From: Octopus sinensis
Taxonomy: Eukaryota
Reading direction: 5' to 3'
DNA length: 64,000 bases
Assembly: GCF_006345805.1 (NCBI RefSeq)
Contig: NC_043010.1
Coordinates: forward strand, 35,464,001-35,528,000
Of the stretch, positions 21,626 through 63,799 are shown in pieces. Every line of letters starts with the position of its first letter. Positions within the stretch are counted from its first letter, which is position 1. A program made the translations under genes and the position numbers. Under the pieces are notes generated by a model. The model saw only the letters and a program-made list of their open reading frames with translations. It made no database searches and was not told the DNA's origin.

Positions 21626-22882
21626 TTGGGTTGTCCGGAAAGTTCGTGCCGATTTTTAAAGGAAAGAAAAAGGTCAATAAATACTTGCCATTATATTTTT
21701 AATCAACCAAATATGAACCATTTTTGTGGCACAATGCGTCTCCATCTTTCCTTTAACTTGAAAATACCCTCTTCCCAGAACTGAGGTGGTTTCATGGCAA
21801 GGAATTCATCAAGGTATCTTTTTAAGTCATCCAAGGAAGTGAAATTTTTACCATTAAAACTATTCTGCAGAGACCTAAATAAGTGGAAATCCGAAGGAGC
21901 AATATATGGTGAATATGGAGGGTGGGGTAACACATCCCAGCTGAGCTGCAGCAATTTTTGTTTGGTTCCCAAAGAAATGTGTGGTCTTGCATTATCATGT
22001 TGGAAAACAACACCCTTCCTGTTGGCCAATCCTGGACGTTTCTCTTGAGTTGCTGCTTTTAACTTGTCCAGTTGTGTGCAGTATTTCTCAGAATTAATTG
22101 TCTGGTTACTTGGGAGAAGCTCATAGTACAGAATTCCTTTCCAATCCCACAAGACACAAAGCAAGACTTTTTTAGGGTGAAGACCCGCTTTTGAGGTGGC
22201 TAAGGGTGGGTCATGTCACTTATTCCAGGATTGCTTTCTCTGAACATTTCAGTAGATAATCCATTTCTCATCACCTGTCACAATTCGCTTTAAAAAAAGG
22301 CATGTTTTCATTCCATTTATAAAGCAAATTACAGATGGAAATGCGATCCAAAAGGTTCTTCTCACTTAACTCACGTGGTACCCAAACATTGTAGTGATTT
22401 GTGTACCCAAGCTTTACCAGGTGCTCATGAACGACAGATTTTGATAGGTTGAGGCTTTCTGCCAATTCTCAGGTTGTGCACTGTGGGTTATTCTCAATTA
22501 ATGACTTGATTTGGTCATCATCTGTAGTGGCTGGTCTGCCTGATCGCTCTTTATCAATAAGGCTACAATCTCCAGCTTGGAACCTTGCAAACTACTTCGG
22601 ATAAAGAAACATCACCGTAAACTGCGCATATTTCTTTGGTTGCTTGTGAGGCATTCTTCCCTTTACAGAAAAAGAAAAGCATCAAGTGCCGAAAATTAAC
22701 TTTCTTATCTTCCATTTTAAAGGGTTGCAGAATTAACACAGGTTATAGGAACATAAACCTTCTTCCACAAAAAGATAGCTTAAACTGTGCTCTAAATGGA
22801 GGTGTAGTCAAATCCTATTATATAGACTCAACCATGTTCTAAAATAAGTTGAAAGGTAAGCTACTATAAATCGGCACAAACT
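21626..22882 (-). mobile_element. Near full-length mariner (DD34D) transposon, frameshifted transposase pseudogene at about 21703-22715
   Basis: TA then TIR ttgggttgtccggaaagttcgtgccgattt at 21626; partial partner aaatcggcacaaact ending at about 22882; transposase motifs MEDKKVNFRHLMLFFF, WVPREL, IVTGDEKW, HDNARPH and YSPYIAPSDFHLF. Confidence 0.95.
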
Positions 22883-36512: not shown

Positions 36513-36827
36513 TTAAACCGAGTCTAGTACAGGTGGCTCATAACCCTCTGGTCTGGAAACCTTCTCTCCAGTTTCTGTGCCAGATGCACCAGTCGTGCTC
36601 TTGCCTTCACCATGCAGCTCCATCAATTTACCAAGATCAAATTTGGGTTTCTTCAATACTTTCACCTTCCTGATGAAGACATCGTGGAGAGGGTAGATAC
36701 CTTGACAAGCCTTTTCAATATCCTTGCCAATACTATCAGGGATGAGTTTGTTGACCACTTCTTTCATGTCATTAGCAGTGACCTCCCGGGTGATGATCTC
36801 AACCATCTTTTTCCTGATTAGTTTTAC
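36513..36827 (-). CDS. RPS3A: 40S ribosomal protein S3a (eS1), exon 2 (104 codons plus stop)
   Basis: Acceptor ttgcattttatag, then [16 protein letters not shown]...[47 protein letters not shown]...PPVLDSV*; with exon 1 it gives 264 aa. Confidence 0.98.
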
Positions 36828-37486
36828 CTATAAAATGCAATAAAATGTAAATATATAACATACACGCAACACAAGAAAATATGCACACAATAAAAATGAC
36901 AGGATACAGGATCACAAGCTCCTTGCATCTTGCTGCCAGTATACTAAGTAGCTAAACTCTCAAACAACCTCTGTGAATTGGGATGGATACAGTTCATTTG
37001 AATGCAGGAGACCAATAACAACAAACATTTTGCTTCACATGGTTTACTTTCTAAAACATTCATGTTTATTATTGGCCTGCAATGGATGATATGATTGTTG
37101 TATTGTCACTATTCCCAGTAAATAGGAATACTGGATTGTTTAATTACTTTTGTGGTCCTGAAGCAAATATTTGGTATAGTATGCTATCCACACCAAATAT
37201 TCAGTGGATACAAGGGAATAACCTAACTACAATAGCCCTAGTTTTTTTTTTTATACAAAATTTCCAGAAATCTTTGTTCTACAAGAAGTTACTATAACAA
37301 TGACAAGATATCTATTGTTTGCTATCCAGCCTCAAAACTAATCATTATTTTAATTAAGTCATATCACCTTGGTGTTGATGGGATTTCTTCCTGAAACAAC
37401 CTTGCCAGAACTTCTGTATTTGTAATTAGCAAAGACACAAAAGAATCTCGAGGCTCCAGTCACTAACTGATGCATGGTCAAGAGCA

Positions 37487-38280
37487 TCATCATCATCATC
37501 GTCGTTTAACGTCCGTTCTCCATGCTAGCATGGGTTGGACGGTTCGACTGGGGTTCTGGGAAGCCAGAAGGCTTCACCAGGCTCCAGTCTAATTTGGCAA
37601 TGTTTCTACAGCTGGATGCCCTTCCTAACGCCAACCACTCCGTGAGTGTAGTGGTGCTTTTTACGTGCCACCTCACAGGTGCCAGGCGGGGCTGGCAACG
37701 GCCACGGTAGATTGGTGTATTTTATTGCCCCGGCACGGAAGCCAGTCGAGGCGGTGCTGGCATCGGCCACGAGTCGGATAGTGCTTTTTACGTACCACCA
37801 GACCAGATCCTGGCTGGTTCAATTCGATTTCGATTTCGCTTGCCCCAACATGTCTTCACAACAAAGGGGTTTGGCAAGGGTGCCTGTCGTACGGTCGCAT
37901 TGGAGTATTTACGTGCCACGGCCACGAGTCGGATAGTGCTTTTTACGTACCACCAGACCAGGGATCCTGGCTGGTTCAATTCGATTTCGATTTCGCTTGC
38001 CCCAACATGTCTTCACAAGCAAGGGGGTTGGCATGGGTGCCTGTCGTACGGTCGCATTGGAGTATTTACGTGCCACACGGCCCCAGTCGGATAGTGCTTT
38101 TTACGTACCACCAGGCCAGGGATCCTGGCTGGTTCAATTCGGTTTCGATTTCGCTTGCCCCAACATTTCTTCGCAAGCATGGGGGGTTGGGATGGGTGTC
38201 TTGTCGTCGGATGAGGTTCTATATTGACTTCGCTTGCCTCAACCGGTCTTTGTGTCCAAGGGAGGAAAGGCATTCATAAG
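37487..38280 (-). mobile_element. Young RTE 3'-UTR insertion with a triplicated unit of about 155 bp, in the RPS3A intron
   Basis: (CAT)n tail at 37487-37500, family motifs, CpGs intact; units begin near 37768, 37921 and 38078. Confidence 0.8.
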
Positions 38281-40031
38281 ATGAATATAAATTTGTTGTG
38301 TTGCCATACCACCCAGCCCAGCTGTAAACCAGTAGTGGTGAAATATGCACAAACTTACATAATCACTTCAATCCTTTCTCAGTTCTAGGATTGAAAGCAT
38401 CTCAACGTTGACCAACCAACTTGTCTTTTTACAGACAGTAAATTACACAAACAGCCTCTTTCTTCGCTTTTTGTGCAAGTATGAGTGAAATGAAAGGATG
38501 GTTGACAACAGAGAATCAGTGCAACGCCAGCAATTATGTGCCACAGGGGACTTGTATCTCTTACAAATTGACGATTAAGTTCTTTCTTATTTAAAAAAAA
38601 CACATGTACAATAGAGTAACATAAATTTGGGGTAAAGTAGTCGAATGCGAACGTAAACAACGACTTTCTGTACGAAACAGAAGGGACCACACGAAGCGAC
38701 ATCGAAAGCTAAAACAGAAAATTAAATTGAGGATTTTCGAAATTCAAGCTGTAAGAAACTAATTTTTGGAAATTTTTAGCGAGAATATTTTCGAGGTCAT
38801 CTACAACCTCCTCCCCCATGAAATCAACAATCTGAATGTATTTGGTCAGAAAACAATTAGAATACCTAGCAAAAAGTCATCCATAAATTATATTCTGATA
38901 TTATAAAAAGAAAAAGCCTAACTTTGTAACATTCATTAAATACTCGTCGTAACTATACACTTAGCTTCAACCGACTCATTAACTACAACAAAACGCAGGC
39001 AATTCGGTAAAAATGGGATTAGGATTAGAAGTCTTTATATCCATTCTTAATTTTTATTTGATCGATTGTAGACGATAGAGAAAGGAAAAATAAATTTCAA
39101 CTTTAGAATAATATGGATTAACAAAAATTGGGCCTCACGTCTTCCACATTCCCTTAGTATATTTTTACCCGTATGAAAATGCTGTTACACTATCAGCTGC
39201 TTTACAGTGTCCTGCATACATGCATCTAAAATTTATTTTCGATAATCACAAATATTAAAGAATATAATAAAAATACAAGTACACACACGTGTTTCGTCCA
39301 CAGTCGAAGTTATTTTTGTTCGATGGATGGCTCCGCACTATGTGAGGGTAATCGTAAGAATACTTCAATATGCGTTGAAAGATTACTTTTTATTTTAGCA
39401 ATTTTTATTGCATTAACATGATTGTTACTTAAACATTAACCAAACGAACTAATTCTACCGCATAGAAACGGTAATAAAATCAGAAAAATACATCAACACC
39501 AGAAGCCGGCCGGTTGTCCTGTAATTTAAACACGCTATGTAAAATTCTTTCGGTAATCTATTCATTACAATCTAAATAAGAAAATCCGATTTCCAATAAT
39601 TATTTTCAAAAACACTATTTAGCAATGGAAATTCCATTTCCTAGGTCCTTCTTTCACATATGAACGAATTTTGAAAATCTCCTACCACACTGATAATGTA
39701 AATGTAACAGAAACAGCATGTCAATCTTAATTAGTCAGTGTAAAGTTTTGTCGATAATCCAAAGGTTTAAAAGAAAATCTTTTACAGGCGGAAGTATTGC
39801 ACCGAACAATTAATATTCCCAATGATTTTGTAAAAAACAAAAAAATGCTTTTCATACATAAATCGTCGCCTCGTAGCGCTGACATTTGTTGAAGATTTAC
39901 CCCTCAGATAGATACCTAATGTTAAGCAACAACGATATTAGACTGCATAAATTACAATAATTATAATAAAAACATGGATTTAAGTGCAACAATTATCATC
40001 ATAATCGCAGGGGAAAAAATAACAAACTTAC

Positions 40032-40511
40032 TTGAGCATGTTGAGCATAACATGTCTTCTTGTTTTGGTTGGGCTTCTTTTTGGTGAAACCGATACAGAA
40101 CATTCTCAACAGATATCCATCAGTGGTTCGTACATCGACATGTGCCTGAATCAGAGTCTGCCATTTCTTCACCATGGAACACAATTTATCTCTGGTCAGG
40201 TCCATGCCGTGGAAATTGGTAAGAACGTTTTTGCCTTGAACTTCTTCGGCGATCAGCTTCATCTTGCGGAAGGCAATTTCGTCATTTTGAAGATCTGCTA
40301 GAGATACTTCAAACACGCGGCCTTTCAGACCTTCGGAGGCAATTTTAGTACCTTGTGTTCTAGTTACTAAAGTTTTGCCGACTTGCCTAATGTTAAACAT
40401 ACTAGGGGCTTTGACATCATACCAATCTTTTTTCGTGAAAGGGTCTACTGGTTTCTTTTTTTGGCCCTTTTTTCCACCTTTTGTAAGCCTCTTATTTTTA
40501 CCAACCGCCAT
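40032..40511 (-). CDS. RPS3A: 40S ribosomal protein S3a (eS1), exon 1 (160 codons)
   Basis: [16 protein letters not shown]...[14 protein letters not shown]...TCYAQHAQ, then donor gtaagt at 40031 (phase 0). Confidence 0.98.
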
Positions 40512-45859: not shown

Positions 45860-47000
45860 GAATTGATATCCTAAAACCAAGGTACCATATGAAAAGCATT
45901 GTTCTAAATTTTGTGGTGTCTGTTCTTTCTTATTCTTTTTTTTCTTGTGGGGGAAATGGAGTGGGTGGGTTTGGTGTCTGTATGGGGAAGGTGGGTCTGA
46001 GTGATCTTGGATGGGATGGAGTTGGACTGGGGTACCACATCATACTCAGTGTCTTTTCTTTTTTTTCTCTTTCTCTTTCTGCTCTCTGTAACTTCCCATT
46101 CTTCCTCCTTTCCTCAATCTGTCTTTTCTTCCTCTCTTTTCTCTTCCATCTCCACAACTGTTTCCCCAGCCATTGTCCTCTGTAGAGGGCAGTATGCTCT
46201 AATGTGGCCCTTTTGGCCACATTTAAAACAATGTGGTACTCTACCTTCTACCTACACCCTCAGCACGATTTTCCCCAATGTCACCGTCTCTGCCAAGTTC
46301 TCCAGTTGCCCTCATCTGTCTGAATAGTGAGTTCAAGTGTCTTTCCTTTCCACCCGCCTTCTTCCGTTTCTGTGGCATGGAGGACAGCCACCTTCTCCTT
46401 GCTTCCAACAAGGACAGCTGCTGCCACCCAAGCCACTTCTATATCTGGTGGAATTGCTTCTACCCTCACCTTGGAAGTCTTTCTTCCAAGGTATGTGGGC
46501 AGAAGCACTACTTCCTCTGTTTTCACTGCTACAGTCGCCAGCTTCCTCACCTCCTCTACTGTCCTAAATTGAACGACTATTGTTCCATATCTTCTTCCTT
46601 TGGTTATGTATGTTATCTCCTTTGATTGTTCCCTCAGTGCCTTTTCCACTTCTGCTTTTTTTTCTTTTAACGAATACATCTTATAGGTGATCGTTTTCCT
46701 CTCCATAATTCCTTTGGGGAACGACGTCTACATGTCGCTGCTCACCTTCTGAGCCATCTTCTCATACTCCTTCAGACCAGCTAAGTCTAGCTCCCTTCGT
46801 GTCACTTCTGTGGCTTCAGCAAAACTCCTTATCTTCAACACTCTGTCCATCTTTATGACTGCCCTTACATGCTCCTCCTCCTCCTCCTCTGACAACTCAG
46901 ACCCATCAAGGTCTGAGTACATCTTCTATGCAACACAAAAAACTACGTCTGACTCTTACGAAATCCAGACAGCAAATAACCCAATGCATGCGCAGGAGCA
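45860..47000 (-). mobile_element. LINE ORF1 (gag-like) remnant with CCHC zinc knuckle; no ORF2
   Basis: ORFs 46728-46922 and 46281-46706 are one frame split by a single TAG; after a frameshift comes CFKCGQKGHIRAYC at 46189-46230, then an acidic/basic low-complexity tract. Confidence 0.75.
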
Positions 47001-47007
47001 AGCTTCT

Positions 47008-47230
47008 TATTTCTTTATTGCCCACAAGGGGCTAAACACAGAGAGGACAGACAAATGGATTAAGTCGATTATATTGACCCCAGTGCGTAACTGGTACTTA
47101 TTTAATCGACCCCGAAAGGATGAAGGGCAAAGTCGACCTAAGCGGAATTTGAACTCAGAACATAGCGGCAGACGAAATACGGCTACGCATTTCGCCCAGC
47201 ATACTAACATGTCTTCCACCTCGCCGCCTT
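47008..47230 (-). mobile_element. tRNA-headed SINE with a Nin/Deu-type central domain
   Basis: Minus strand has gagttcaaattccgc (B box) then gtcgactttgcccttcatcctttcggggtcgattaaataagtaccag; older copies at about 6000-6130, 28490-28620, 30170-30330, 54470-54600 and 59760-59970. Domain name is inferred from memory of the consensus. Confidence 0.75.
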
Positions 47231-47577
47231 CTTACCACACAGCCTCACCTGTGCCTGTGTATGTATTATCACCATCTACTGTTTGCAAGATGTTCTGGTT
47301 ATACAAACTAATGAAGCTGCAAATATTTTGATGAAACTGTAGCTAACTTTTTGCCAATGTTGGTAAGAACATTATATGAGAGGATTTCACCAGATACTAG
47401 TTCATTTTCTAATTTTACATGTTTGAGTATTTCATGTAAGTTTGATGAAACAAACAAGAGAAATAGGATTCAATATAAGAGTATATGTGCTTTTCCTTTT
47501 AATTAGCAGAAAGTTACACAAGTTATTCATAGGCTGAGTTTTATGAAATTTTCAGCTAAGTTACTTTTCTAACTTTA

Positions 47578-47990: not shown

Positions 47991-48394
47991 TGTTCAAAAT
48001 TCACAACAGCTGTTTCAGCAACATTTTATTGATGCATTCTCAGATAACATCATGGCAAAACCCCTCCATCTTTAGGTAAATTTCAAATATATAAACAGGT
48101 AAGGTAGAAATAGAGGCAACTAGTTTCCAAAATTCACAACAGCTGTTTCACTGGCAGTTTATTGATACATTCTCAGATAACATCATGGCAAAAAAACCCC
48201 ACCATCTTTAGGTAAATTTCAAACATATAAACAGGTAAGGTAGAAATAGAGGCAACTAGTTTCCAAAATTCACAACAGCTGTTTCACTGGCATTTTATTG
48301 ATGCATTCTCAGATAACATCATGGCAAAACCCCATCGTCTTTAGGTAAATTTCAAACATATAAACAGGTAAGGCAGAAATAGAGGCAACTAGTT
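47991..48394. repeat. Tandem repeat, 3 copies of about 135 bp
   Basis: Unit caaaattcacaacagctgtttca...ttctcagataacatcatggcaaaa...tttaggtaaatttcaaa..ataaacaggtaagg.agaaatagaggcaactagtt. Confidence 0.95.
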
Positions 48395-50019
48395 CACCCA
48401 CAATCATGGCAGACATTTTCCATTATGATTGTTGGTTAACTGGTGTCAATGCAGAATGTGCTACATGTCCTTGACTGAACTAGAGAATACTACTGTCTCA
48501 GCAAGAGGTGACAGATCAGCATTTCCTTCCAAGTTGATCCAGTTTTAATATAAAATAAAGAAAAGAAAAAAGAAGATACACCCTCCGTCCCATATAACTT
48601 CTCTGTCAGAATGATATCTTAACTTAGTACAACTTTTATTATGTTTGGTGAGTTGTAATGACACATTTATATTGGCGCGGTTACAAAGTTCGCTACACAA
48701 CTACGTTGTTTCAGGTTTAATCCCATTACATAACATGACCACAGTAGTTAAATTTAGTAGGCAGAGAACATATTTGGAGCGGTAGACTAATCCGCCATTC
48801 GGTTTAACATGACTATCTAACACCTTAATGTATAAAGTATGTTGCCGATAGATATCAGACACTCCCACCTCTCAGCAGTGTCCACTCAGTTGCAAGAATT
48901 CGGTCAACTCTTCGGTATGAGGACAACTCGCACTTTCTAGTTTCGGAAGCTTTGAACATGGGCGCTGCACTTCCTCCTCTTGACTAAATAGTCTACACAA
49001 ATATATAAATTTGAAAAAAAAAAAAAAAGCTTCTTTGAAAAAGTTACGGTAATAATAAAAAAGAAAGTAAAAGAGAAAGGTCCTCCATTAAATCTCATAT
49101 CTGTCATAAATGTTATGTATAAAGTTTACAGAAACAAATAATCATGCCAACAATCTCACTTTTGTGAAATTTAACATACTTTTGCTGACGCAGACCGCTA
49201 AGTTTAGCCGGGCTGGAGATTTTCTTTCCTGTTATGTAATTGTAATTGAGAGAAATTGGTTTAGAATTTAATACCACTTTTTATTTAAAACTAAATTAAA
49301 TGTCATATTCAAAAAAATATACTTCATCTGCATCCAACTGACTTTAACTTAGAAAAGAGAGAAAAAAAGAAATAAAAACAATTTTTGGTTCATACGAATC
49401 ATTCTCAGAATCTTTCCTCAGTCAAGTTCACGCTTGCTTTACCCAAAATGCAACAGGCATCCGGCTGATTATAATATTTGTCCGAAAAAAAAAAATTGAT
49501 AAATATTAATTATTCACGAATATAATTATCATATTTTATTAATATTAATACTTTCAGTCGTAAAGGAGTATGGATTTAATTTAATTTAAGCGAATAAATA
49601 TACACTAATGTCTGTCCTATTTTTATTTACTTCCTACCCACTTATCGGTTCTACGGAAAAAAATATATAACTTAAAACAATCATTTTTATTTGAGATATA
49701 TTTAATCTACATTTATTACCATTAATAAAAAAAGAAACACTTTCAGAACTTCCGTTCCAGCTTCCATTTGTATATATATATATAAATATATATTTATAAA
49801 ATAATACATTTCAGTGACTAATCATTAAAAAGGATGTCTCCTCTTCCATTTCTTTTTATAACCTAATTAGACTATGTTGATATTTGTCGTCAAATCAGAG
49901 TGTATAGAAATATAATCCTTTGAAAAAACCCAGATTACTTATTACCTAAATTAACATTGTCATATGTTAGAATAGAAATTACGAGTGAAATAAGAGATAG
50001 AAAGAAGGGACGAAGAGGA

Positions 50020-50160
50020 GGTTAAACTCCGCAGTTGATCCTGTCTCCTCCCGTTTCTGCGCGTCTAGTTTTCTACTACCGTGCATGCGCTGTCCGTTTA
50101 TCTCGGAGCTCCATTATTGTTCTGCTGCTGTTGTAGCGAGCGAAGAGGACAGCTTGCTTG
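50020..50160 (+). promoter_or_regulatory. Probable promoter/TSS region of the C6orf62-like transcript
   Basis: CpG-rich patch with a pyrimidine-rich stretch and an NRF1-like tgcatgcgc at about 50082, upstream of and on the same strand as the ORF islands and C6orf62. TSS not determinable from sequence. Confidence 0.5.
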
Positions 50161-50311
50161 TTCTCTTTCTTTATTCTTTCAGACAAATATTTCATTGCTT
50201 CTGGTACTGATTTTGTCAGTCAGCAAATCTTCCACTGAGTCTCATGCAGAAACTTGCCGTAGCAGGAAATATGCTGTCGTGCCTTTCTCGGCACTGCCTC
50301 ATACTTCGACC

Positions 50312-51133
50312 ATGGATGTTGACGAAGGACCCAGCAACATATACATAACAGCCCTGTTGGCAGAGAGACCCACCAACTCTTTTTGTAATTATAATAATAA
50401 TTACTATTATAATCTTTGTTGTCAACGCCAACGCCCCTTGCCTCAACAACTTCATTACTGTTACTATTACAGCTACTGTTATTATTACTATTACCACTCT
50501 CGTCATCTTCGCCAACTCATTGGAATCTCTTCTACTGCGACCAACAACACCAATCTCATTGCCGCTGCCCTTGCTGCTGCTACCTCTATAACCACCATTT
50601 ATATAGCCTTATTTGCTGTTGTTGACAGTTTTCTATTTCTTCTGTTTTTATCAGCGCATCAAAACACCAATAGCACCAACATAGACAACAACAGCACAAA
50701 TACTGACATTAAGACCACCTCTATTACAAATAACAGAACCAACATAAACTCCAGTAGAAACACCATTAACAATAACACGAACATTACCACAGTTGTCTCC
50801 ACGACGAATAACAACAACAACAACAGAAAGTATTTAACTAATACTCAAAGCACTTTTCTCTCTTTACCCGTCTCCTCTCACTTCTACCTCGCCAGTAACA
50901 AGTACACGACCATCGACATAGACCAGGGTGACATCGACAACATTGTCGGCATCAACCTCAGCAGCAAAAGGAAACGACGTTCGAACAGAAGTGACGGCGC
51001 ACAACAGTCAACACAATGTCTCGGAAGTGATTGCGAATGGGACTGTCTCGATGAGAAAAGCTTGTTTGAAACGATCAATTTCCTATCATCCTACTACCCG
51101 TTCACATCATCATTTGTAGATTTAATCAAATAG
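50312..51133 (+). CDS. Candidate upstream ORF1, 273 aa, low-complexity protein of unknown function
   Basis: ATG in strong context (gaccATGG); frame open from 50081; internal repeats are triplet-based; no homologue recognised. Confidence 0.45.
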   Translation: MDVDEGPSNIYITALLAERPTNSFCNYNNNYYYNLCCQRQRPLPQQLHYCYYYSYCYYYYYHSRHLRQLIGISSTATNNTNLIAAALAAATSITTIYIALFAVVDSFLFLLFLSAHQNTNSTNIDNNSTNTDIKTTSITNNRTNINSSRNTINNNTNITTVVSTTNNNNNNRKYLTNTQSTFLSLPVSSHFYLASNKYTTIDIDQGDIDNIVGINLSSKRKRRSNRSDGAQQSTQCLGSDCEWDCLDEKSLFETINFLSSYYPFTSSFVDLIK

Positions 51134-51618
51134 AACTGATAGCCAGAGAGAGATAAGAGAGCAACAACGATATTATAACAGTAATGATGATAGTAGCAAA
51201 GCTGTATTAAGTAAATTATTCGCAACTATACATACAAAACAAACATACACATTATACATTTAATATGTAAACAATATTGTATATTTATTTTGTATACATA
51301 ACTCTTATAGCAACATGTATTTAGACATAAGTTAACAGTGAATTTTCAGATGGGAGGGAATAAGGTTCTATCTTAAAACTCAGTATTTAAGCTTTTTTTT
51401 GTTTTTTTTATATGCACTCATGGTTTCTCAGAGTCCCGAATTAGATTTATGTAATAATTATTTTTATTACAACACATCTATTTCTTAGCTAAGCCAAACA
51501 CTAGTTTGCTTGTTGACTGAAAACAAATTTTTTTCAATATGCTTGCAAGTTGAAAGTGAATTTTTTTTTTTTCTTTTGTTTTTGGTGTTACTATCTGCTG
51601 TAAAAATCATTTTTCAGC

Positions 51619-51888
51619 ATGAAGTCGCTAGCAACGGGTATGAACGGGGTAGTTTCTGCCACCATTTGTGATAAACCTTGTTGTTCTTTGCCTCTGTCGA
51701 TTCAACTGCCTCCTCCACCACACTCTGTCGCCTCTAATACCACCACCACTGTTCCTCCGTTAATAGCTTTCGCCGCTGCCACCATTCCCATTGCGTCCAT
51801 CAGTCTCAGTAATACAAGCCACATCAGCATGCCACCAGCGATAACAACCGCTGCTGTTGCCCCTTGTTTGCAGACCCTGTTGTTTTGA
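51619..51888 (+). CDS. Candidate upstream ORF2, 89 aa, Pro/Thr/Ala-rich
   Basis: ATG (agcATG) 1 nt after an acceptor-like tttttcag; ORF coincides with a GC-richer island between AT-rich spacers. Confidence 0.3.
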   Translation: MKSLATGMNGVVSATICDKPCCSLPLSIQLPPPPHSVASNTTTTVPPLIAFAAATIPIASISLSNTSHISMPPAITTAAVAPCLQTLLF

Positions 51889-52155
51889 TTAAGCATTTTA
51901 ACAACAAACCCTCCATAACATATACTGGGCACTTGCCATTCCCTCCCTTCCTTATTTTCTTTCTAAACCTCTATTTTCTCCTTTCTTTTATGGGGGTGTG
52001 TGTTATCATGTGAAATGAGTTATATAAATATGTATAAATAAATGAATGTAATTTATCTATATATATTTTAGTGTATATTGAACAGTTTTCTTCAGAATGA
52101 CATCATAAAAGGAATTGGGATTTGTGTTCGAAAAAAAAAAAAAATTGTAGGAAAA

Positions 52156-52335
52156 ATGACGAAGTCGCATTTTGAAGCAGACCTTTCGGTGGGTCTGTCT
52201 ATTTTGCGAAGAACTCATTATATTGTCCATGGGCTTGTTGATGATTTCGGTGTCCCATCTCCACCACCATCACATTCGTCAGTCCTAATAGCATCACTAA
52301 TTACTTCTCTTTTCTTTCCTTTAGAATCTTGTTGA
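52156..52335 (+). CDS. Candidate upstream ORF3, 59 aa
   Basis: aaaaATGA context; MTKSHFEADLSVGLSILRRTHYIVHGLVDDFGVPSPPP...; coincides with a GC-richer island. Confidence 0.3.
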   Translation: MTKSHFEADLSVGLSILRRTHYIVHGLVDDFGVPSPPPSHSSVLIASLITSLFFPLESC

Positions 52336-53831
52336 GTAAATATATATATATATATATATAATTTTTTTCATGATAGAGTGTACAATAGACGTGTACATGT
52401 ATAATAGAAATGTGTGAGCATGAAATAGTTGTGTGAATAGGTTGGAAGTTCATAAATGATTTGAAGTTTCTTTGGGAAAGATATATTTTTGAAAAGAAAG
52501 AAAAAAAGTGGGTTAAAGAAAAAAAAAATTAAAATGTATTTTTTGTTAATGTCATTTTATTAATATCATACTATTGTGAAAAAAAATCTACAAAAAAATG
52601 TATTAGTGATGCAAAATATAGATTTTGTTGTGTTCGTGAAGGTGAGAATTTTTTTTTAAACCTCACAAAAATCCAATTAAATATATATATATATATTTAA
52701 AAATGTAGATTTATAATATGAAAAAACCCCACAAATATTTGTATGTTAGTTTGTAAAAACTAAAAAAAAAAAAATATATATATAAATATAAATCTACACA
52801 ATCCCATATTCCCTTTTTCCATTCCTTTTCTCTGCTGAGAAAACCAGTATGTTTAAGTCTACATGTATATAATACTAAATGACTTGACTATTGGGCAAAA
52901 AGAGTTATATAAAATATATCTGCGGTATGGATATAATAAGGGCTGAAAATCTTGTTCTAAACTAAAACAGGTGACAACTATGGCAAATACTTAGGAAATA
53001 TTGAAAGAGAAAAGGGAGAAAAAAAAAAGCACCAGCACAGCTTTTTTTTCCTGAAAAATTTGGTTCAGACCAAAAAGTTTTCAATAATTACAAAAATAAA
53101 AAAATTCTTTAGGTTTTTAGATGCTTTGATGAAGGGACAGGAGTTAAAAGAAAAGAAGAAAACCCAGAATTAAAAATATACAAATCACTGATAGTGTTAA
53201 CATAGTTTGTCAAATAAGATGGAAGAATGAATAAAAGAAATTAAGATAATTTTTGAGGTGATATTGGGCACGAGAATTAAGTCTTCAATTGGTACAAGCA
53301 CGACTACAACAAGTCGATACTGTACAAGTTAAAAGTTTTTGTAGTCTTGGAGTGAAATTCCATTGGCTATATATGATTATCTTCTCCAAGTAAGGTTCTA
53401 TTTGAAACTACTTCCCAATATTTCATAGGTTTGCGAACTTTTTTTTTCAAAGATTGTTGTTGACTCCTGTAGTACAACAGTTTTAATTTTTTTCCTTGGT
53501 TCTCATTTTTTTTTGTTTTCAATTGTCAGCAAATTCAAGATATACTATTCCTTTTTTTAAGTTTTCATGAAGTAAATCCCCTACATAAAGAAAAGGAAAA
53601 CGAATTACTTTTAATGATTTTTTTTTCCACAGTGTGTATAAGTTAATCTACAGTTAATTTATTTGATCTCATTCTATTCCCATTCCTTTTGTCATCAACA
53701 GTTTGTTAATCATCTTAGGTGTCTATAGTTATAAGTTTTCAAGCTCATCTCTCCTTAGTGCTATAATAGGTTTCATCCTGTTGTTGAGGAATCATATAGT
53801 TTAAATAAAAAGAAAAGAGAAAACCTGTAGG

Positions 53832-53960
53832 ATGGGGGATTCCTATACACGCAAGCAGACGGCTGTGAACCGGCTGAGGCATCGACTGAGAAAGAAACGA
53901 GAATCTTTGGCAGATCATTTTGACTTCAAAATGTACATTATGTTCCATTTCAAAGACAAG
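53832..53960 (+). CDS. C6orf62: C6orf62 orthologue (uncharacterised conserved protein), coding exon 1 (43 codons)
   Basis: [43 protein letters not shown] matches the human N-terminus as I recall it ([43 protein letters not shown]); in-frame stop upstream at 53802; donor gtatgt at 53961. Confidence 0.92.
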
Positions 53961-54129
53961 GTATGTATCAGTTTTTTTTATTTTAATTTTTTAAACTTTT
54001 CTAGTTTTGTAATCACTAATTTGATGTTTTTAGAGCCCAAACATGATTGCAACAGTTAAATTTGTTATTTATATTTCAGAAATGTATGTTCATTATGATT
54101 TATCGTTGTCTCCAATAAACACCATTTGA

Positions 54130-63712: not shown

Positions 63713-63799
63713 AAAAAAGCATCTGCTCTCTTTGAAGTTGCAGAAGTTTTCCCTGTCATGACAAACAACTATGAAGACAGTATTTTACGAGGTGTTAGG
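63713..63799 (+). CDS. C6orf62: C6orf62 orthologue, coding exon 2 (29 codons); gene continues beyond the window
   Basis: Acceptor tatttttcag, then [29 protein letters not shown] (human as recalled: [29 protein letters not shown]), donor gtaagt at 63800; phase 0 join with exon 1. Confidence 0.92.

What the first reader, a model, noticed from the sequence alone, without database searches (positions are those of the whole stretch)
48420..54120. Transposon-free 5.7 kb zone with three ORF islands ahead of C6orf62: candidate polycistronic or uORF-controlled transcript
Seen: I recognise no SINE, LINE or MITE here, while the rest of the window has them roughly every kilobase. Between the CpG promoter-like patch (about 50020-50160) and the C6orf62 ATG (53832) lie three GC-richer islands, each matching an ATG-to-stop ORF on the same strand (50312-51133, 51619-51888, 52156-52335), separated by A/T-run spacers, plus several tiny uORFs (e.g. 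MKGQELKEKKKTQN near 53119). An in-frame stop at 53802 and the conserved MGD start argue against a simple N-terminal extension. Candidate splice sites: donor AAG|GTGAGA at 52642, acceptors at 51617, 53632 and 53701. Inference: one mRNA encoding several small proteins plus C6orf62, or a heavily translationally gated leader for this uncharacterised conserved gene.
Basis: partly seen in the sequence, partly recalled or inferred. Interest (0 to 1): 0.8.

Follow-up and report, generated by a model that had tools for sequence, protein, structure and literature searches.

The report
Octopod-only gene just upstream of C6orf62
The largest of the three "ORF islands" is a real protein-coding gene found so far only in octopods. 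It sits 2.7 kb ahead of C6orf62 on the same strand; the two smaller ORFs have no support, and nothing here shows that they all share one mRNA.

Summary
C6orf62 (Pfam DUF4566) starts at 53832, and the three ATG-to-stop ORFs coincide with GC-richer islands separated by A/T-run spacers.

ORF1 (50312-51133, 273 aa, start context aCCATGg) is a genuine coding gene:
- A related octopus contig keeps it open, with the same start and stop.
- All 8 indels inside it are multiples of three, against 5 of 17 upstream.
- dN/dS is 0.43.
- Argonauta hians has an annotated 181-aa hypothetical protein (GAB1604272.1) with the same N-terminal motifs and the same C-terminal motif up to the stop.
- No Pfam or PDB relative exists, and AlphaFold2 gives a low-confidence model (mean pLDDT 36).

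ORF2 and ORF3 are only marginally longer than chance (P about 0.03 and 0.005, with island limits chosen after the fact). I could get no comparative data for them.

Whether ORF1 and C6orf62 share a transcript cannot be decided from DNA. Separate or alternatively spliced mRNAs are favoured: 47 ATGs and three AATAAA signals (52037, 53095, 53230) lie between them, and the last 215 nt before the C6orf62 ATG are ATG-free. The only strong CpG, NRF1-like promoter patch lies upstream of ORF1, so a shared transcription unit stays possible. The absence of repeats is real but not exceptional in this window.

The parts
50012..50211 (+). CpG-rich promoter-like patch with an NRF1-like GCATGCGC core. It is the putative TSS region of the ORF1 gene, and possibly of the whole unit.
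   Evidence: 11 CpG, o/e 1.04. It is 92.5% identical to related contig L003, whose only indels here are 1, 1, 2 and 1 nt, so it is non-coding. L003 carries a perfect GCGCATGCGC. Promoter function is inferred.
50212..50311 (+). Leader of ORF1, 100% identical in the related species.
   Evidence: 100 of 100 identical; together with the first 89 nt of ORF1 this makes 189 identical bases, while flanks are 86-92%. No significant RNA fold (z=-1.44).
50244..50348 (+). 34-codon upstream ORF (ATGs at 50244 and 50271, same frame) that overlaps the ORF1 start.
   Evidence: Translation; ATG list. It lies wholly in the invariant block. Function unknown.
50312..51133 (+). ORF1: 273-aa coding sequence of an octopod-restricted gene, start context aCCATGg, stop TAG.
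   Evidence: P0003 from contig L003 is 87% identical over the whole ORF with the same start and stop. All 8 indels are multiples of 3. dN/dS=0.43. Argonauta hians GAB1604272.1 shares both termini. 0 of 2000 shuffles give an ORF this long.
51619..51888 (+). Island 2 / ORF2 (89 codons). Probably non-coding, most likely part of the ORF1 3'UTR.
   Evidence: GC 0.50, 9 CpG per 200 nt. ORF length P=0.027. A 76-codon ORF on the opposite strand of the same island shows that stop codons are scarce here by composition. No Pfam hit; no similarity to ORF1 or to the Argonauta protein.
52037..52042 (+). First canonical AATAAA after the ORF1 stop; candidate 3' end of the ORF1 mRNA.
   Evidence: A T/GT-rich stretch follows. 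Usage is inferred.
52156..52335 (+). Island 3 / ORF3 (59 codons). Either a candidate non-coding first exon or promoter of C6orf62, or part of the ORF1 3'UTR.
   Evidence: CpG o/e 0.8-1.2. ORF length P=0.005. Bounded by ttgtag|G and TGA|GTAAAT; the donor scores below 2 in my crude matrix. Only a sub-threshold Pfam hit, E=0.019.
53633..53831 (+). Proximal 5' leader of C6orf62, free of ATG, starting at a candidate acceptor (ttttttttccacag|TG at 53632).
   Evidence: The last upstream ATG is at 53614; a 215-nt ATG-free run has P about 0.03 at local ATG density. In-frame TAA at 53802. The acceptor is inferred.
53832..53960 (+). C6orf62 (DUF4566) coding exon 1, start context AGGATGG, donor GTATGT at 53961.
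   Evidence: Pfam DUF4566 E=1.8e-18; tblastn; donor score 9.0.
63713..63799 (+). C6orf62 coding exon 2 (29 codons), after a 9.75-kb intron.
   Evidence: tblastn; sequence. The related-species contigs L001 and L002 carry the same exon.

Best explanation
**What the zone contains.** It holds the promoter-proximal parts of two neighbouring same-strand genes. It is not one multi-cistron message.

**Gene 1 (ORF1).**
- It is a taxonomically restricted protein-coding gene seen so far only in octopods.
- Transcription most likely starts in the CpG/NRF1-like patch at about 50.02-50.2 kb.
- Ribosomes start at the ATG at 50312, which has the optimal aCCATGg context. The product is 273 aa, low-complexity and largely disordered.
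- The parts conserved out to Argonauta are short motifs: MDV(V)DEG and ITALLAER at the N-terminus, and SDCxWDCLxEKSLF...NFLxSY...SSFVxLxK-stop at the C-terminus. It therefore probably acts through short linear motifs rather than a fold.
- Its mRNA probably runs through island 2 as 3'UTR to the AATAAA at 52037.

**Gene 2 (C6orf62).** It is translated from an mRNA that does not carry ORF1 in front of it. That mRNA either starts downstream (island 3 or about 53.3 kb) or comes from splicing an upstream non-coding exon onto the acceptor at 53632. Either way the leader is short and ATG-free.

**ORF2 and ORF3.** They are most likely GC-rich untranslated segments whose open frames follow from their composition.

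**Shown:** ORF1 is under coding constraint; the C6orf62 exons are where stated.
**Inferred:** TSS, polyA site, splice sites, and the non-coding status of ORF2 and ORF3.
For: **ORF1 is coding**
- Ortholog P0003 on the genomic contig L003 aligns to 49084-51145.
- All 8 indels inside the ORF are 3n (12, 9, 9, 3, 3, 3, 15, 3). Upstream, 5 of 17 are.
- Start ATG and stop TAG sit at the same aligned positions in both species.
- dS=0.144 and dN=0.062, so dN/dS=0.43.
- Only 8-18% of neutral simulations with 59 substitutions stay free of stops.
- The five other frames carry 8-27 stops in both species.
- A reading of all 1.84 billion representative proteins returned only P0003 and P0004. P0004 is GAB1604272.1, Argonauta hians, collinear from Met1 to the last residue.

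**ORF1 has no known fold**
- No Pfam family and no significant PDB match.
- AlphaFold2 mean pLDDT 36, single sequence.

**Separate messages**
- 47 ATGs lie between the ORF1 stop and the C6orf62 ATG. 24 of them are in the last 1.5 kb and all open tiny ORFs.
- AATAAA at 52037, 53095 and 53230.
- 215-nt ATG-free run ending at the C6orf62 ATG.
- CpG o/e falls from 0.5-1.7 (48.6-52.4 kb) to 0-0.6 after 52.4 kb.

**ORF2 and ORF3 weak**
- P=0.027 and 0.005 with post-hoc island limits.
- Opposite-strand ORF in island 2.
- No family hit and no similarity to ORF1.
Against: **Against two separate genes**
- No transcript data could be reached, so the TSS, polyA site and splice sites are guesses.
- The only strong CpG, NRF1-like patch, the housekeeping kind expected for C6orf62, lies upstream of ORF1. 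Nothing comparable sits next to the C6orf62 ATG. This fits a shared promoter at least as well.
- A gap of 2.7 kb between two same-strand genes is small beside the 9.75-kb first intron of C6orf62.

**Limits on the ORF1 evidence**
- The indels sit mostly in trinucleotide-like repeats, which tend to change by 3n anyway.
- dN/dS rests on 59 substitutions in one species pair.
- Nucleotide identity of the ORF1 body (0.89) is close to that of the upstream non-coding DNA (0.865).

**Limits on the ORF2/ORF3 verdict**
- Their comparative status is unknown. My combined protein search was saturated by low-complexity candidates: only 8000 were scored. Finding no homolog says nothing.
Confidence: 0.5

Rival explanations
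1. **Shared transcription unit (dicistronic locus).** One promoter at about 50.1 kb drives a primary transcript containing both ORF1 and C6orf62.
- Either alternative splicing or polyadenylation yields an ORF1 mRNA and a C6orf62 mRNA that share a first exon.
- Or a mature dicistronic mRNA exists in which ORF1 acts as a very long upstream cistron limiting C6orf62 translation.
For: - The only strong CpG, NRF1-like promoter patch lies upstream of ORF1. The unmethylated-looking domain (CpG o/e 0.5-1.7) spans 48.6-52.4 kb and there is no second patch near 53.8 kb.
- Strong-looking acceptors at 53632 and 53701 imply an upstream non-coding exon for C6orf62.
- The 189-nt block 50212-50400 is invariant even at synonymous sites. 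That suggests a second function laid over the ORF1 start.
- The ORF1 body has no ATG in any frame for 700 nt in both species. Expected counts are 6.8 (dinucleotide shuffles, 0 of 5000 reach zero) and 4.7 (codon shuffles, P=0.0056).
- Human C6orf62 carries a translated uORF in a 5' extension (bioRxiv 10.1101/523860), and its knockout has a selective viability phenotype (bioRxiv 10.1101/2023.05.04.539399).
Against: - No usable donor lies between the putative TSS and the end of ORF1. The best is CTG|GTACTG, score 4.0.
- 47 ATGs and three AATAAA signals (52037, 53095, 53230) separate the two coding regions.
- Reinitiation after a 273-codon ORF is inefficient (established knowledge of scanning).
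- No homology between ORF1 and the human uORF could be tested.
- No report of nuclear polycistronic mRNAs in cephalopods turned up in the paper library.
Confidence: 0.3
2. **The reader's full model.** ORF1, ORF2, ORF3 and C6orf62 are all translated cistrons of one polycistronic mRNA, possibly resolved operon-style at the AG that precedes each downstream ATG.
For: - ORF2 and ORF3 coincide with sharp GC and CpG islands that lack homopolymer runs.
- Both are longer than most shuffles (P=0.027 and 0.005).
- Both ATGs have A at -3.
- Each downstream ATG is closely preceded by an acceptor-like AG: tttcag|cATG, ttgtag|gaaaaATG, ctgtag|gATG.
- ORF2 and ORF3 share a frame, 537 nt apart.
Against: - There is no homolog, family or comparative support for ORF2 or ORF3.
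- Island 2 is equally open on the opposite strand.
- The spacers of 486, 268 and 1497 nt are full of ATGs.
- Spliced-leader trans-splicing is not known in molluscs (my own knowledge, not tested here).
Confidence: 0.07
3. **ORF1 is not coding.** It is a chance open frame in trinucleotide-like low-complexity DNA of a promoter-proximal region. It stays open because such repeats slip in units of three.
For: - The product is extremely low-complexity (N, T, Y, S runs).
- Several indels lie in 3-periodic repeats.
- Nucleotide identity is similar to that of upstream non-coding DNA.
- Substitutions by codon position are only weakly skewed: 16, 19, 24.
- AlphaFold2 finds no fold.
Against: - The same start and stop are kept in three taxa, including Argonauta. 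The C-terminal 40 residues are still recognisable there: whole-library E=1.4e-4, pairwise E=5e-12.
- dN/dS=0.43.
- All other frames are closed.
- The start context is optimal.
- 0 of 2000 shuffles give such an ORF.
- An independent annotation pipeline called the gene in A. hians (the methods of PMC12682272 describe the GINGER pipeline for the genomes of that paper).
Confidence: 0.05

Closest known systems
Taxonomically restricted ('orphan') protein-coding genes with low-complexity, disordered products
   Same: - Relatives only within one lineage: a related octopus and Argonauta.
- No Pfam or PDB relative.
- A fast-evolving repetitive middle with short conserved terminal motifs.
- A single coding exon lying in the open, CpG-normal region next to an older conserved gene.
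   Different: Expression and translation are not shown here. The age of the gene is unknown, because squid, cuttlefish, vampire squid and Nautilus could not be queried directly.
Human C6orf62 uORF: a translated smORF in a 5' extension (bioRxiv 10.1101/523860) whose knockout has a selective phenotype in medulloblastoma cells (bioRxiv 10.1101/2023.05.04.539399)
   Same: An ORF upstream of the C6orf62 coding sequence, on the same strand, with evidence that it matters in its own right.
   Different: The human one is a small ORF shown to lie in the C6orf62 transcript. The octopus ORF1 is 273 codons, 2.7 kb upstream, and not shown to be on the same mRNA. Sequence homology between the two was not testable because I did not have the human uORF sequence.
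Animal dicistronic genes with a conserved upstream cistron (for example SNURF-SNRPN, MIEF1 microprotein, ASNSD1 uORF/ASDURF, Drosophila stoned; named from my own knowledge)
   Same: Two conserved ORFs in tandem on one strand, apparently downstream of a single promoter-like patch.
   Different: In those genes both ORFs are documented on one mature mRNA and the spacer is short. Here the spacer is 2.7 kb, with 47 ATGs and several polyA signals, and co-transcription is unproven.
Classical uORF-gated leaders (GCN4/ATF4 type)
   Same: Many short ORFs lie upstream of the main ATG if the whole 52.3-53.8 kb stretch were exonic. A 34-codon uORF overlaps the ORF1 start.
   Different: 24 ATGs in 1.5 kb matches the background ATG density of this AT-rich DNA (0.016 per nt). 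The last 215 nt are ATG-free, which looks like ordinary intron or intergenic DNA followed by a clean short leader.

Membership tests
C6orf62 / DUF4566 (PF15130) | N-terminal sequence matches the family profile above the curated cut-off | tested here: met
   53832-53960 scores 67.3 bits against a cut-off of 27, E=1.8e-18, profile positions 1-43. Exon 2 continues the match.
Lineage-restricted protein-coding gene (ORF1) | The ORF is kept open, with the same start and stop, in related genomes; indels preserve the frame | tested here: met
   L003: 284 codons, same ATG and TAG, all 8 indels are 3n. The Argonauta protein is collinear from end to end.
Lineage-restricted protein-coding gene (ORF1) | Purifying selection on the protein (dN/dS below 1) | tested here: met
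   dN/dS=0.43 from 59 substitutions in one species pair. The sample is modest.
Lineage-restricted protein-coding gene (ORF1) | No detectable homolog outside the lineage | tested here: met
   Only P0003 and P0004 at E<=0.001 among 1.84 billion representatives. No Pfam family and no significant PDB match. Caveat: this library appears to hold few annotated animal proteomes, since no full-length C6orf62 was returned.
Lineage-restricted protein-coding gene (ORF1) | Transcribed and translated | not testable with these tools
   There is only an annotated gene model in A. hians. The paper describes its pipeline as combining ab initio, RNA-seq and homology evidence. The evidence behind this particular model is unknown.
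Polycistronic / dicistronic animal mRNA | All cistrons are present on one mature mRNA | not testable with these tools
   No transcript-derived contigs could be retrieved. Exact look-ups of every window ORF returned nothing.
Polycistronic / dicistronic animal mRNA | Each proposed cistron shows coding constraint | tested here: inconclusive
   ORF1 and C6orf62 do. ORF2 and ORF3 have only marginal length statistics and no comparative data.
Polycistronic / dicistronic animal mRNA | No polyadenylation signal or promoter-like element between the cistrons | tested here: not met
   AATAAA at 52037, 53095 and 53230 and ATTAAA at 52528, 52676 and 53169 lie between them (AATAAA at 53804 sits just 28 nt before the C6orf62 ATG). 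There is a CpG cluster at island 3. These are motif matches only; usage is unknown.
uORF-gated leader (GCN4/ATF4 type) | Short uORFs within the mature 5'UTR, enriched or conserved beyond background | tested here: not met
   ATG density in 52336-53831 is the local background (0.016 per nt). The 215 nt next to the main ATG hold none. ORF1 is 273 codons, which is not a short uORF. Whether the stretch is exonic is unknown.
Spliced-leader operon (nematode/tunicate type) | Short intercistronic regions, each ending in a 3' splice acceptor, in a taxon that trans-splices | tested here: inconclusive
   An AG precedes each downstream ATG. The spacers are 486, 268 and 1497 nt, and my crude matrix gives the known exon-2 acceptor only 3.1, so it cannot discriminate. 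Trans-splicing in molluscs is not known (my own knowledge).

The most novel reading that the evidence does not exclude
ORF1 and C6orf62 form a conserved dicistronic unit in octopods. A lineage-specific 273-codon upstream cistron arose inside the leader of an ancient, uncharacterised gene.
- It would share that gene's housekeeping-type promoter.
- Through alternative splicing or translational coupling it would set how much C6orf62 is made.
- This would be an independent, much larger counterpart of the functional uORF reported for human C6orf62.
- The invariant 189-nt block over the ORF1 start and the 700-nt ATG-free ORF1 body would be footprints of that dual use.
Probability: 0.25. Interest if true: 0.6.

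Novelty: new member of a known kind. Interest (0 to 1): 0.35.

Why it matters
C6orf62 is conserved across animals and still has no known function. In human cells its upstream ORF has been reported to matter independently of the main protein.

An octopod-specific gene placed directly in front of it, apparently behind the only clear promoter-like patch, gives a concrete locus for two questions:
- How do new genes arise in the leaders or promoter regions of old ones?
- Is upstream-ORF control a recurring feature of C6orf62?

For annotation the practical point is simple. The zone contains two genes, not one gene with a giant leader. ORF2 and ORF3 should not be called as proteins without further evidence.

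Tried and rejected
- **Protein searches with C6orf62 exon 1, and exon 1+2**. They returned only an unrelated 48-aa fragment and the exon-2 read-through ORF of a related octopus. No full-length cephalopod C6orf62 came back, so I could fetch no orthologous locus with its upstream region.
- **One combined query, ORF1-X10-ORF2-X10-ORF3**. It found the ORF1 ortholog, but low-complexity candidates filled the 8000-candidate limit. It is uninformative for ORF2 and ORF3, and this was a poor use of the last search.
- **Exact look-ups of window ORFs**: ORF1 in two start versions, ORF2, ORF3 in two versions, the C6orf62 exon-1 ORF and the antisense ORF over exon 1. None is on record.
- **Two metagenome scans**: the ORF1 profile and a 29-mer from the invariant block. 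Nothing found.
- **Rfam and tRNA scans of the zone**. Only sub-threshold chance hits; the islands are not known RNA genes.
- **RNA fold of the invariant block**. z=-1.44, not significant.
- **Similarity of ORF1 to ORF2, and of ORF2 to the Argonauta protein**. None, so the islands are not duplicates of one another.
- **Home-made splice-site matrices**. The known exon-2 acceptor scores only 3.1, so acceptor calls are unreliable. Donor 52642 is strong, but one such site is expected by chance in a zone this size.
- **AlphaFold2 on ORF1 alone**. pLDDT 36, so I ran no fold search.

Full report
**1. What is in the sequence**

The window is AT-rich animal DNA with overall CpG o/e of 0.35.

C6orf62:
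- 53832-53960 encodes [43 protein letters not shown]. It matches Pfam DUF4566 positions 1-43 at E=1.8e-18 and is followed by GTATGT.
- The next coding exon is 63713-63799, after a 9.75-kb intron. Only the first two coding exons of C6orf62 are in the window.

- The three ATG-to-stop ORFs are at exactly the stated coordinates.
- They coincide with GC 0.40, 0.50 and 0.41. The spacers have GC 0.27-0.28 and are full of homopolymer runs, which the ORFs lack.
- The CpG patch at 50.0-50.2 kb, the in-frame TAA at 53802 and the donor at 52642 are all present.
- The tiny uORF is present too, at 53129 rather than 53119.

The repeat-free claim holds by self-BLAST: 0% of the zone is repeated within the window against 20% of the rest. 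But 7-27 kb and 55-59 kb are equally free, so it is not a distinguishing feature.

**2. ORF1 is a real gene**

*Related octopus.* The combined protein search returned one strong hit, P0003 (E=1.5e-142). It was called on a 2294-nt genomic Logan contig, L003, from run SRR11869391. L003 aligns to window 49084-51145. The same sample set also yielded C6orf62 exon 2 with intron flanks at 84% identity (L001 and L002). It is therefore a related octopus, about 12-18% diverged in non-coding DNA.

In the alignment:
- The ATG at 50312 and the TAG at 51131 are kept.
- All eight indels inside the ORF are multiples of three (12, 9, 9, 3, 3, 3, 15, 3). Upstream of 50212 they are 1, 1, 2, 1, 22, 3, 39, 2, 3, 8, 24 and so on; 5 of 17 are 3n.
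- Upstream of about 50212 the two species' extended frames disagree. The conserved ORF therefore begins at the ATG, whose context is the optimal aCCATGg.

Selection measures:
- Nei-Gojobori gives dS=0.144 and dN=0.062, so dN/dS=0.43 over 263 aligned codons.
- 59 random substitutions leave the frame free of stops in only 8-18% of simulations.
- The other five frames carry 8-27 stops in both species.
- No dinucleotide shuffle of island 1 gives a 273-codon ORF, 0 of 2000.

*Argonauta.* A HMMER pass over 1.84 billion representative proteins found only P0003 and P0004. P0004 is GAB1604272.1, 'hypothetical protein Ahia01_000708600 [Argonauta hians]', on a 30.7-Mb scaffold.
- It begins MDVVDEG...ITALLAER.
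- It ends ...QWLTSDCKWDCLAEKSSLFVSRNFLTSYLLKSSFVYLVK.
- It is therefore collinear with ORF1 from the first to the last residue.
- The paper that presents the A. hians assembly describes the GINGER pipeline, which combines ab initio, RNA-seq and homology evidence, for its annotation (PMC12682272).
- Neutral DNA would not stay alignable across the Octopus-Argonauta split (my own knowledge), so retention of both termini is protein-level constraint.

*What differs in Argonauta.* The middle of ORF1 is not kept there: the Cys/Tyr-rich run, the hydrophobic stretch at residues ~88-120, the N/T-rich tract and the KRKRR.

*No known fold.*
- No Pfam family.
- No significant PDB sequence match.
- AlphaFold2 gives mean pLDDT 36, with helices only over the hydrophobic stretch and the C-terminal motif.

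The product looks like a disordered protein acting through short terminal motifs. The acidic W-x-x-L core in SDCEWDCLDE resembles an LC3-interacting motif. That is a resemblance recalled from memory, not a test.

**3. ORF2 and ORF3**

- Their lengths are only marginally unusual: P=0.027 and P=0.005 in shuffles of islands delimited after the fact, and P=0.039 for an 89-codon ORF anywhere in 51134-53831.
- Island 2 has a 76-codon ORF on the opposite strand, so stop codons are scarce there by composition.
- There is no Pfam hit above threshold and no similarity to ORF1 or to the Argonauta protein.
- Exact look-ups found nothing.
- My one homology search that included them was saturated by low-complexity candidates. 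The lack of homologs is not evidence.
- I treat them as probably non-coding, but untested.

**4. One transcript or two?**

No tool here gives RNA evidence.

For separate or alternatively spliced mRNAs:
- Between the ORF1 stop and the C6orf62 ATG there are 47 ATGs. 24 of them are in the last 1.5 kb, which is the local background density of 0.016 per nt.
- AATAAA lies at 52037 (followed by a T/GT-rich stretch), 53095 and 53230, with a further one at 53804 just 28 nt before the C6orf62 ATG.
- The last 215 nt before the C6orf62 ATG are ATG-free, P about 0.03. That run begins at the candidate acceptor ttttttttccacag|TG at 53632.
- This looks like an ordinary short clean leader preceded by intron or intergenic DNA.

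For a shared unit:
- The only strong CpG patch lies upstream of ORF1. It has an NRF1-like core, which is a perfect GCGCATGCGC in the related species.
- The CpG-normal domain spans 48.6-52.4 kb, and nothing comparable flanks the C6orf62 ATG.
- The two coding regions are only 2.7 kb apart.
- Human C6orf62 has a translated uORF with a phenotype of its own.

Against a simple shared first exon: no good donor lies between the putative TSS and the end of ORF1.

My rough weights are 0.5 for two mRNAs, including the variant in which island 3 is a non-coding first exon of C6orf62, and 0.3 for a shared transcription unit.

**5. Unexplained features**

- 50212-50400 is 100% identical between the two species, while the flanks are 86-92%. 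The block covers 100 nt of leader and the first 30 codons, synonymous sites included. At 12% divergence, a run of 189 identical sites has a probability of about 0.88^189, roughly 3e-11.
- That block contains a 34-codon uORF (50244-50348) overlapping the ORF1 start. It has no significant RNA fold.
- The ORF1 body has no ATG in any frame for 700 nt, and for 736 nt in the ortholog. Dinucleotide shuffles expect 6.8 (0 of 5000 reach zero) and codon shuffles expect 4.7 (P=0.0056).
- Either feature could reflect a second use of this RNA or DNA. Either could also be a side effect of the odd composition. I found both after the fact.

**6. Verdict**

It is probably wrong about three cistrons, and it is unproven about one mRNA.

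The core result is an octopod-restricted gene encoding a disordered protein, already carried as a hypothetical protein in the A. hians annotation, directly upstream of C6orf62. That makes it a new member of a known kind (a lineage-restricted gene) and of moderate interest. The interest would rise if long-read RNA data showed a true dicistronic unit.

Noticed in passing
window 36516-40511 (- strand): Ribosomal protein S3a gene in two coding exons. Residues 1-161 are at 40511-40029 and the C-terminal exon (about residues 162-264) ends at 36516, with an intron of about 3.2 kb. It is transcribed away from the ORF1/C6orf62 pair, and its ATG lies 9.5 kb from the CpG patch.
   Followed up: partly
window 21703-22164 (- strand): Mariner-type transposase fragment (Pfam Transposase_1, E=8.8e-18). 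It is single-copy in the window, so the self-BLAST repeat test does not see it.
   Followed up: partly
window 47995-48394: A 136-bp unit repeated three times in tandem (92% matches), directly at the left edge of the 'clean' zone.
   Followed up: no
window 54.1-54.6 kb; also 3-5, 27-35, 37-38, 41-46 and 62-64 kb: An interspersed repeat family with up to 7-9 copies in the window. One copy starts about 160 nt after the C6orf62 exon-1 donor.
   Followed up: no
window 50212-50400: 189 bases identical to the related-species contig L003, including synonymous sites and 100 nt of leader. The block contains a 34-codon uORF (50244-50348) that overlaps the ORF1 start.
   Followed up: partly
window 50316-51016 and L003 1409-2144: No ATG in any forward frame for 700 nt (736 nt in the ortholog) inside ORF1. 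This is well below shuffle expectations.
   Followed up: partly
window 48600-52400: CpG o/e of 0.5-1.7 over about 3.8 kb, against 0.35 for the window. This unmethylated-looking domain starts 1.4 kb upstream of the promoter-like patch. The part of it covered by L003 (49.09-50.01 kb) is 86-87% identical to L003, slightly above the identity of about 81% that I estimate for the intron flanks of exon 2 alone (84% over the whole alignment including the exon).
   Followed up: no
window 46281-46706 (-) and 46810-47331 (+): Two ORFs of 141 and 173 aa with no Pfam match, in a stretch with strong strand composition skew (GC skew -0.33). Possibly part of an unclassified mobile element.
   Followed up: no
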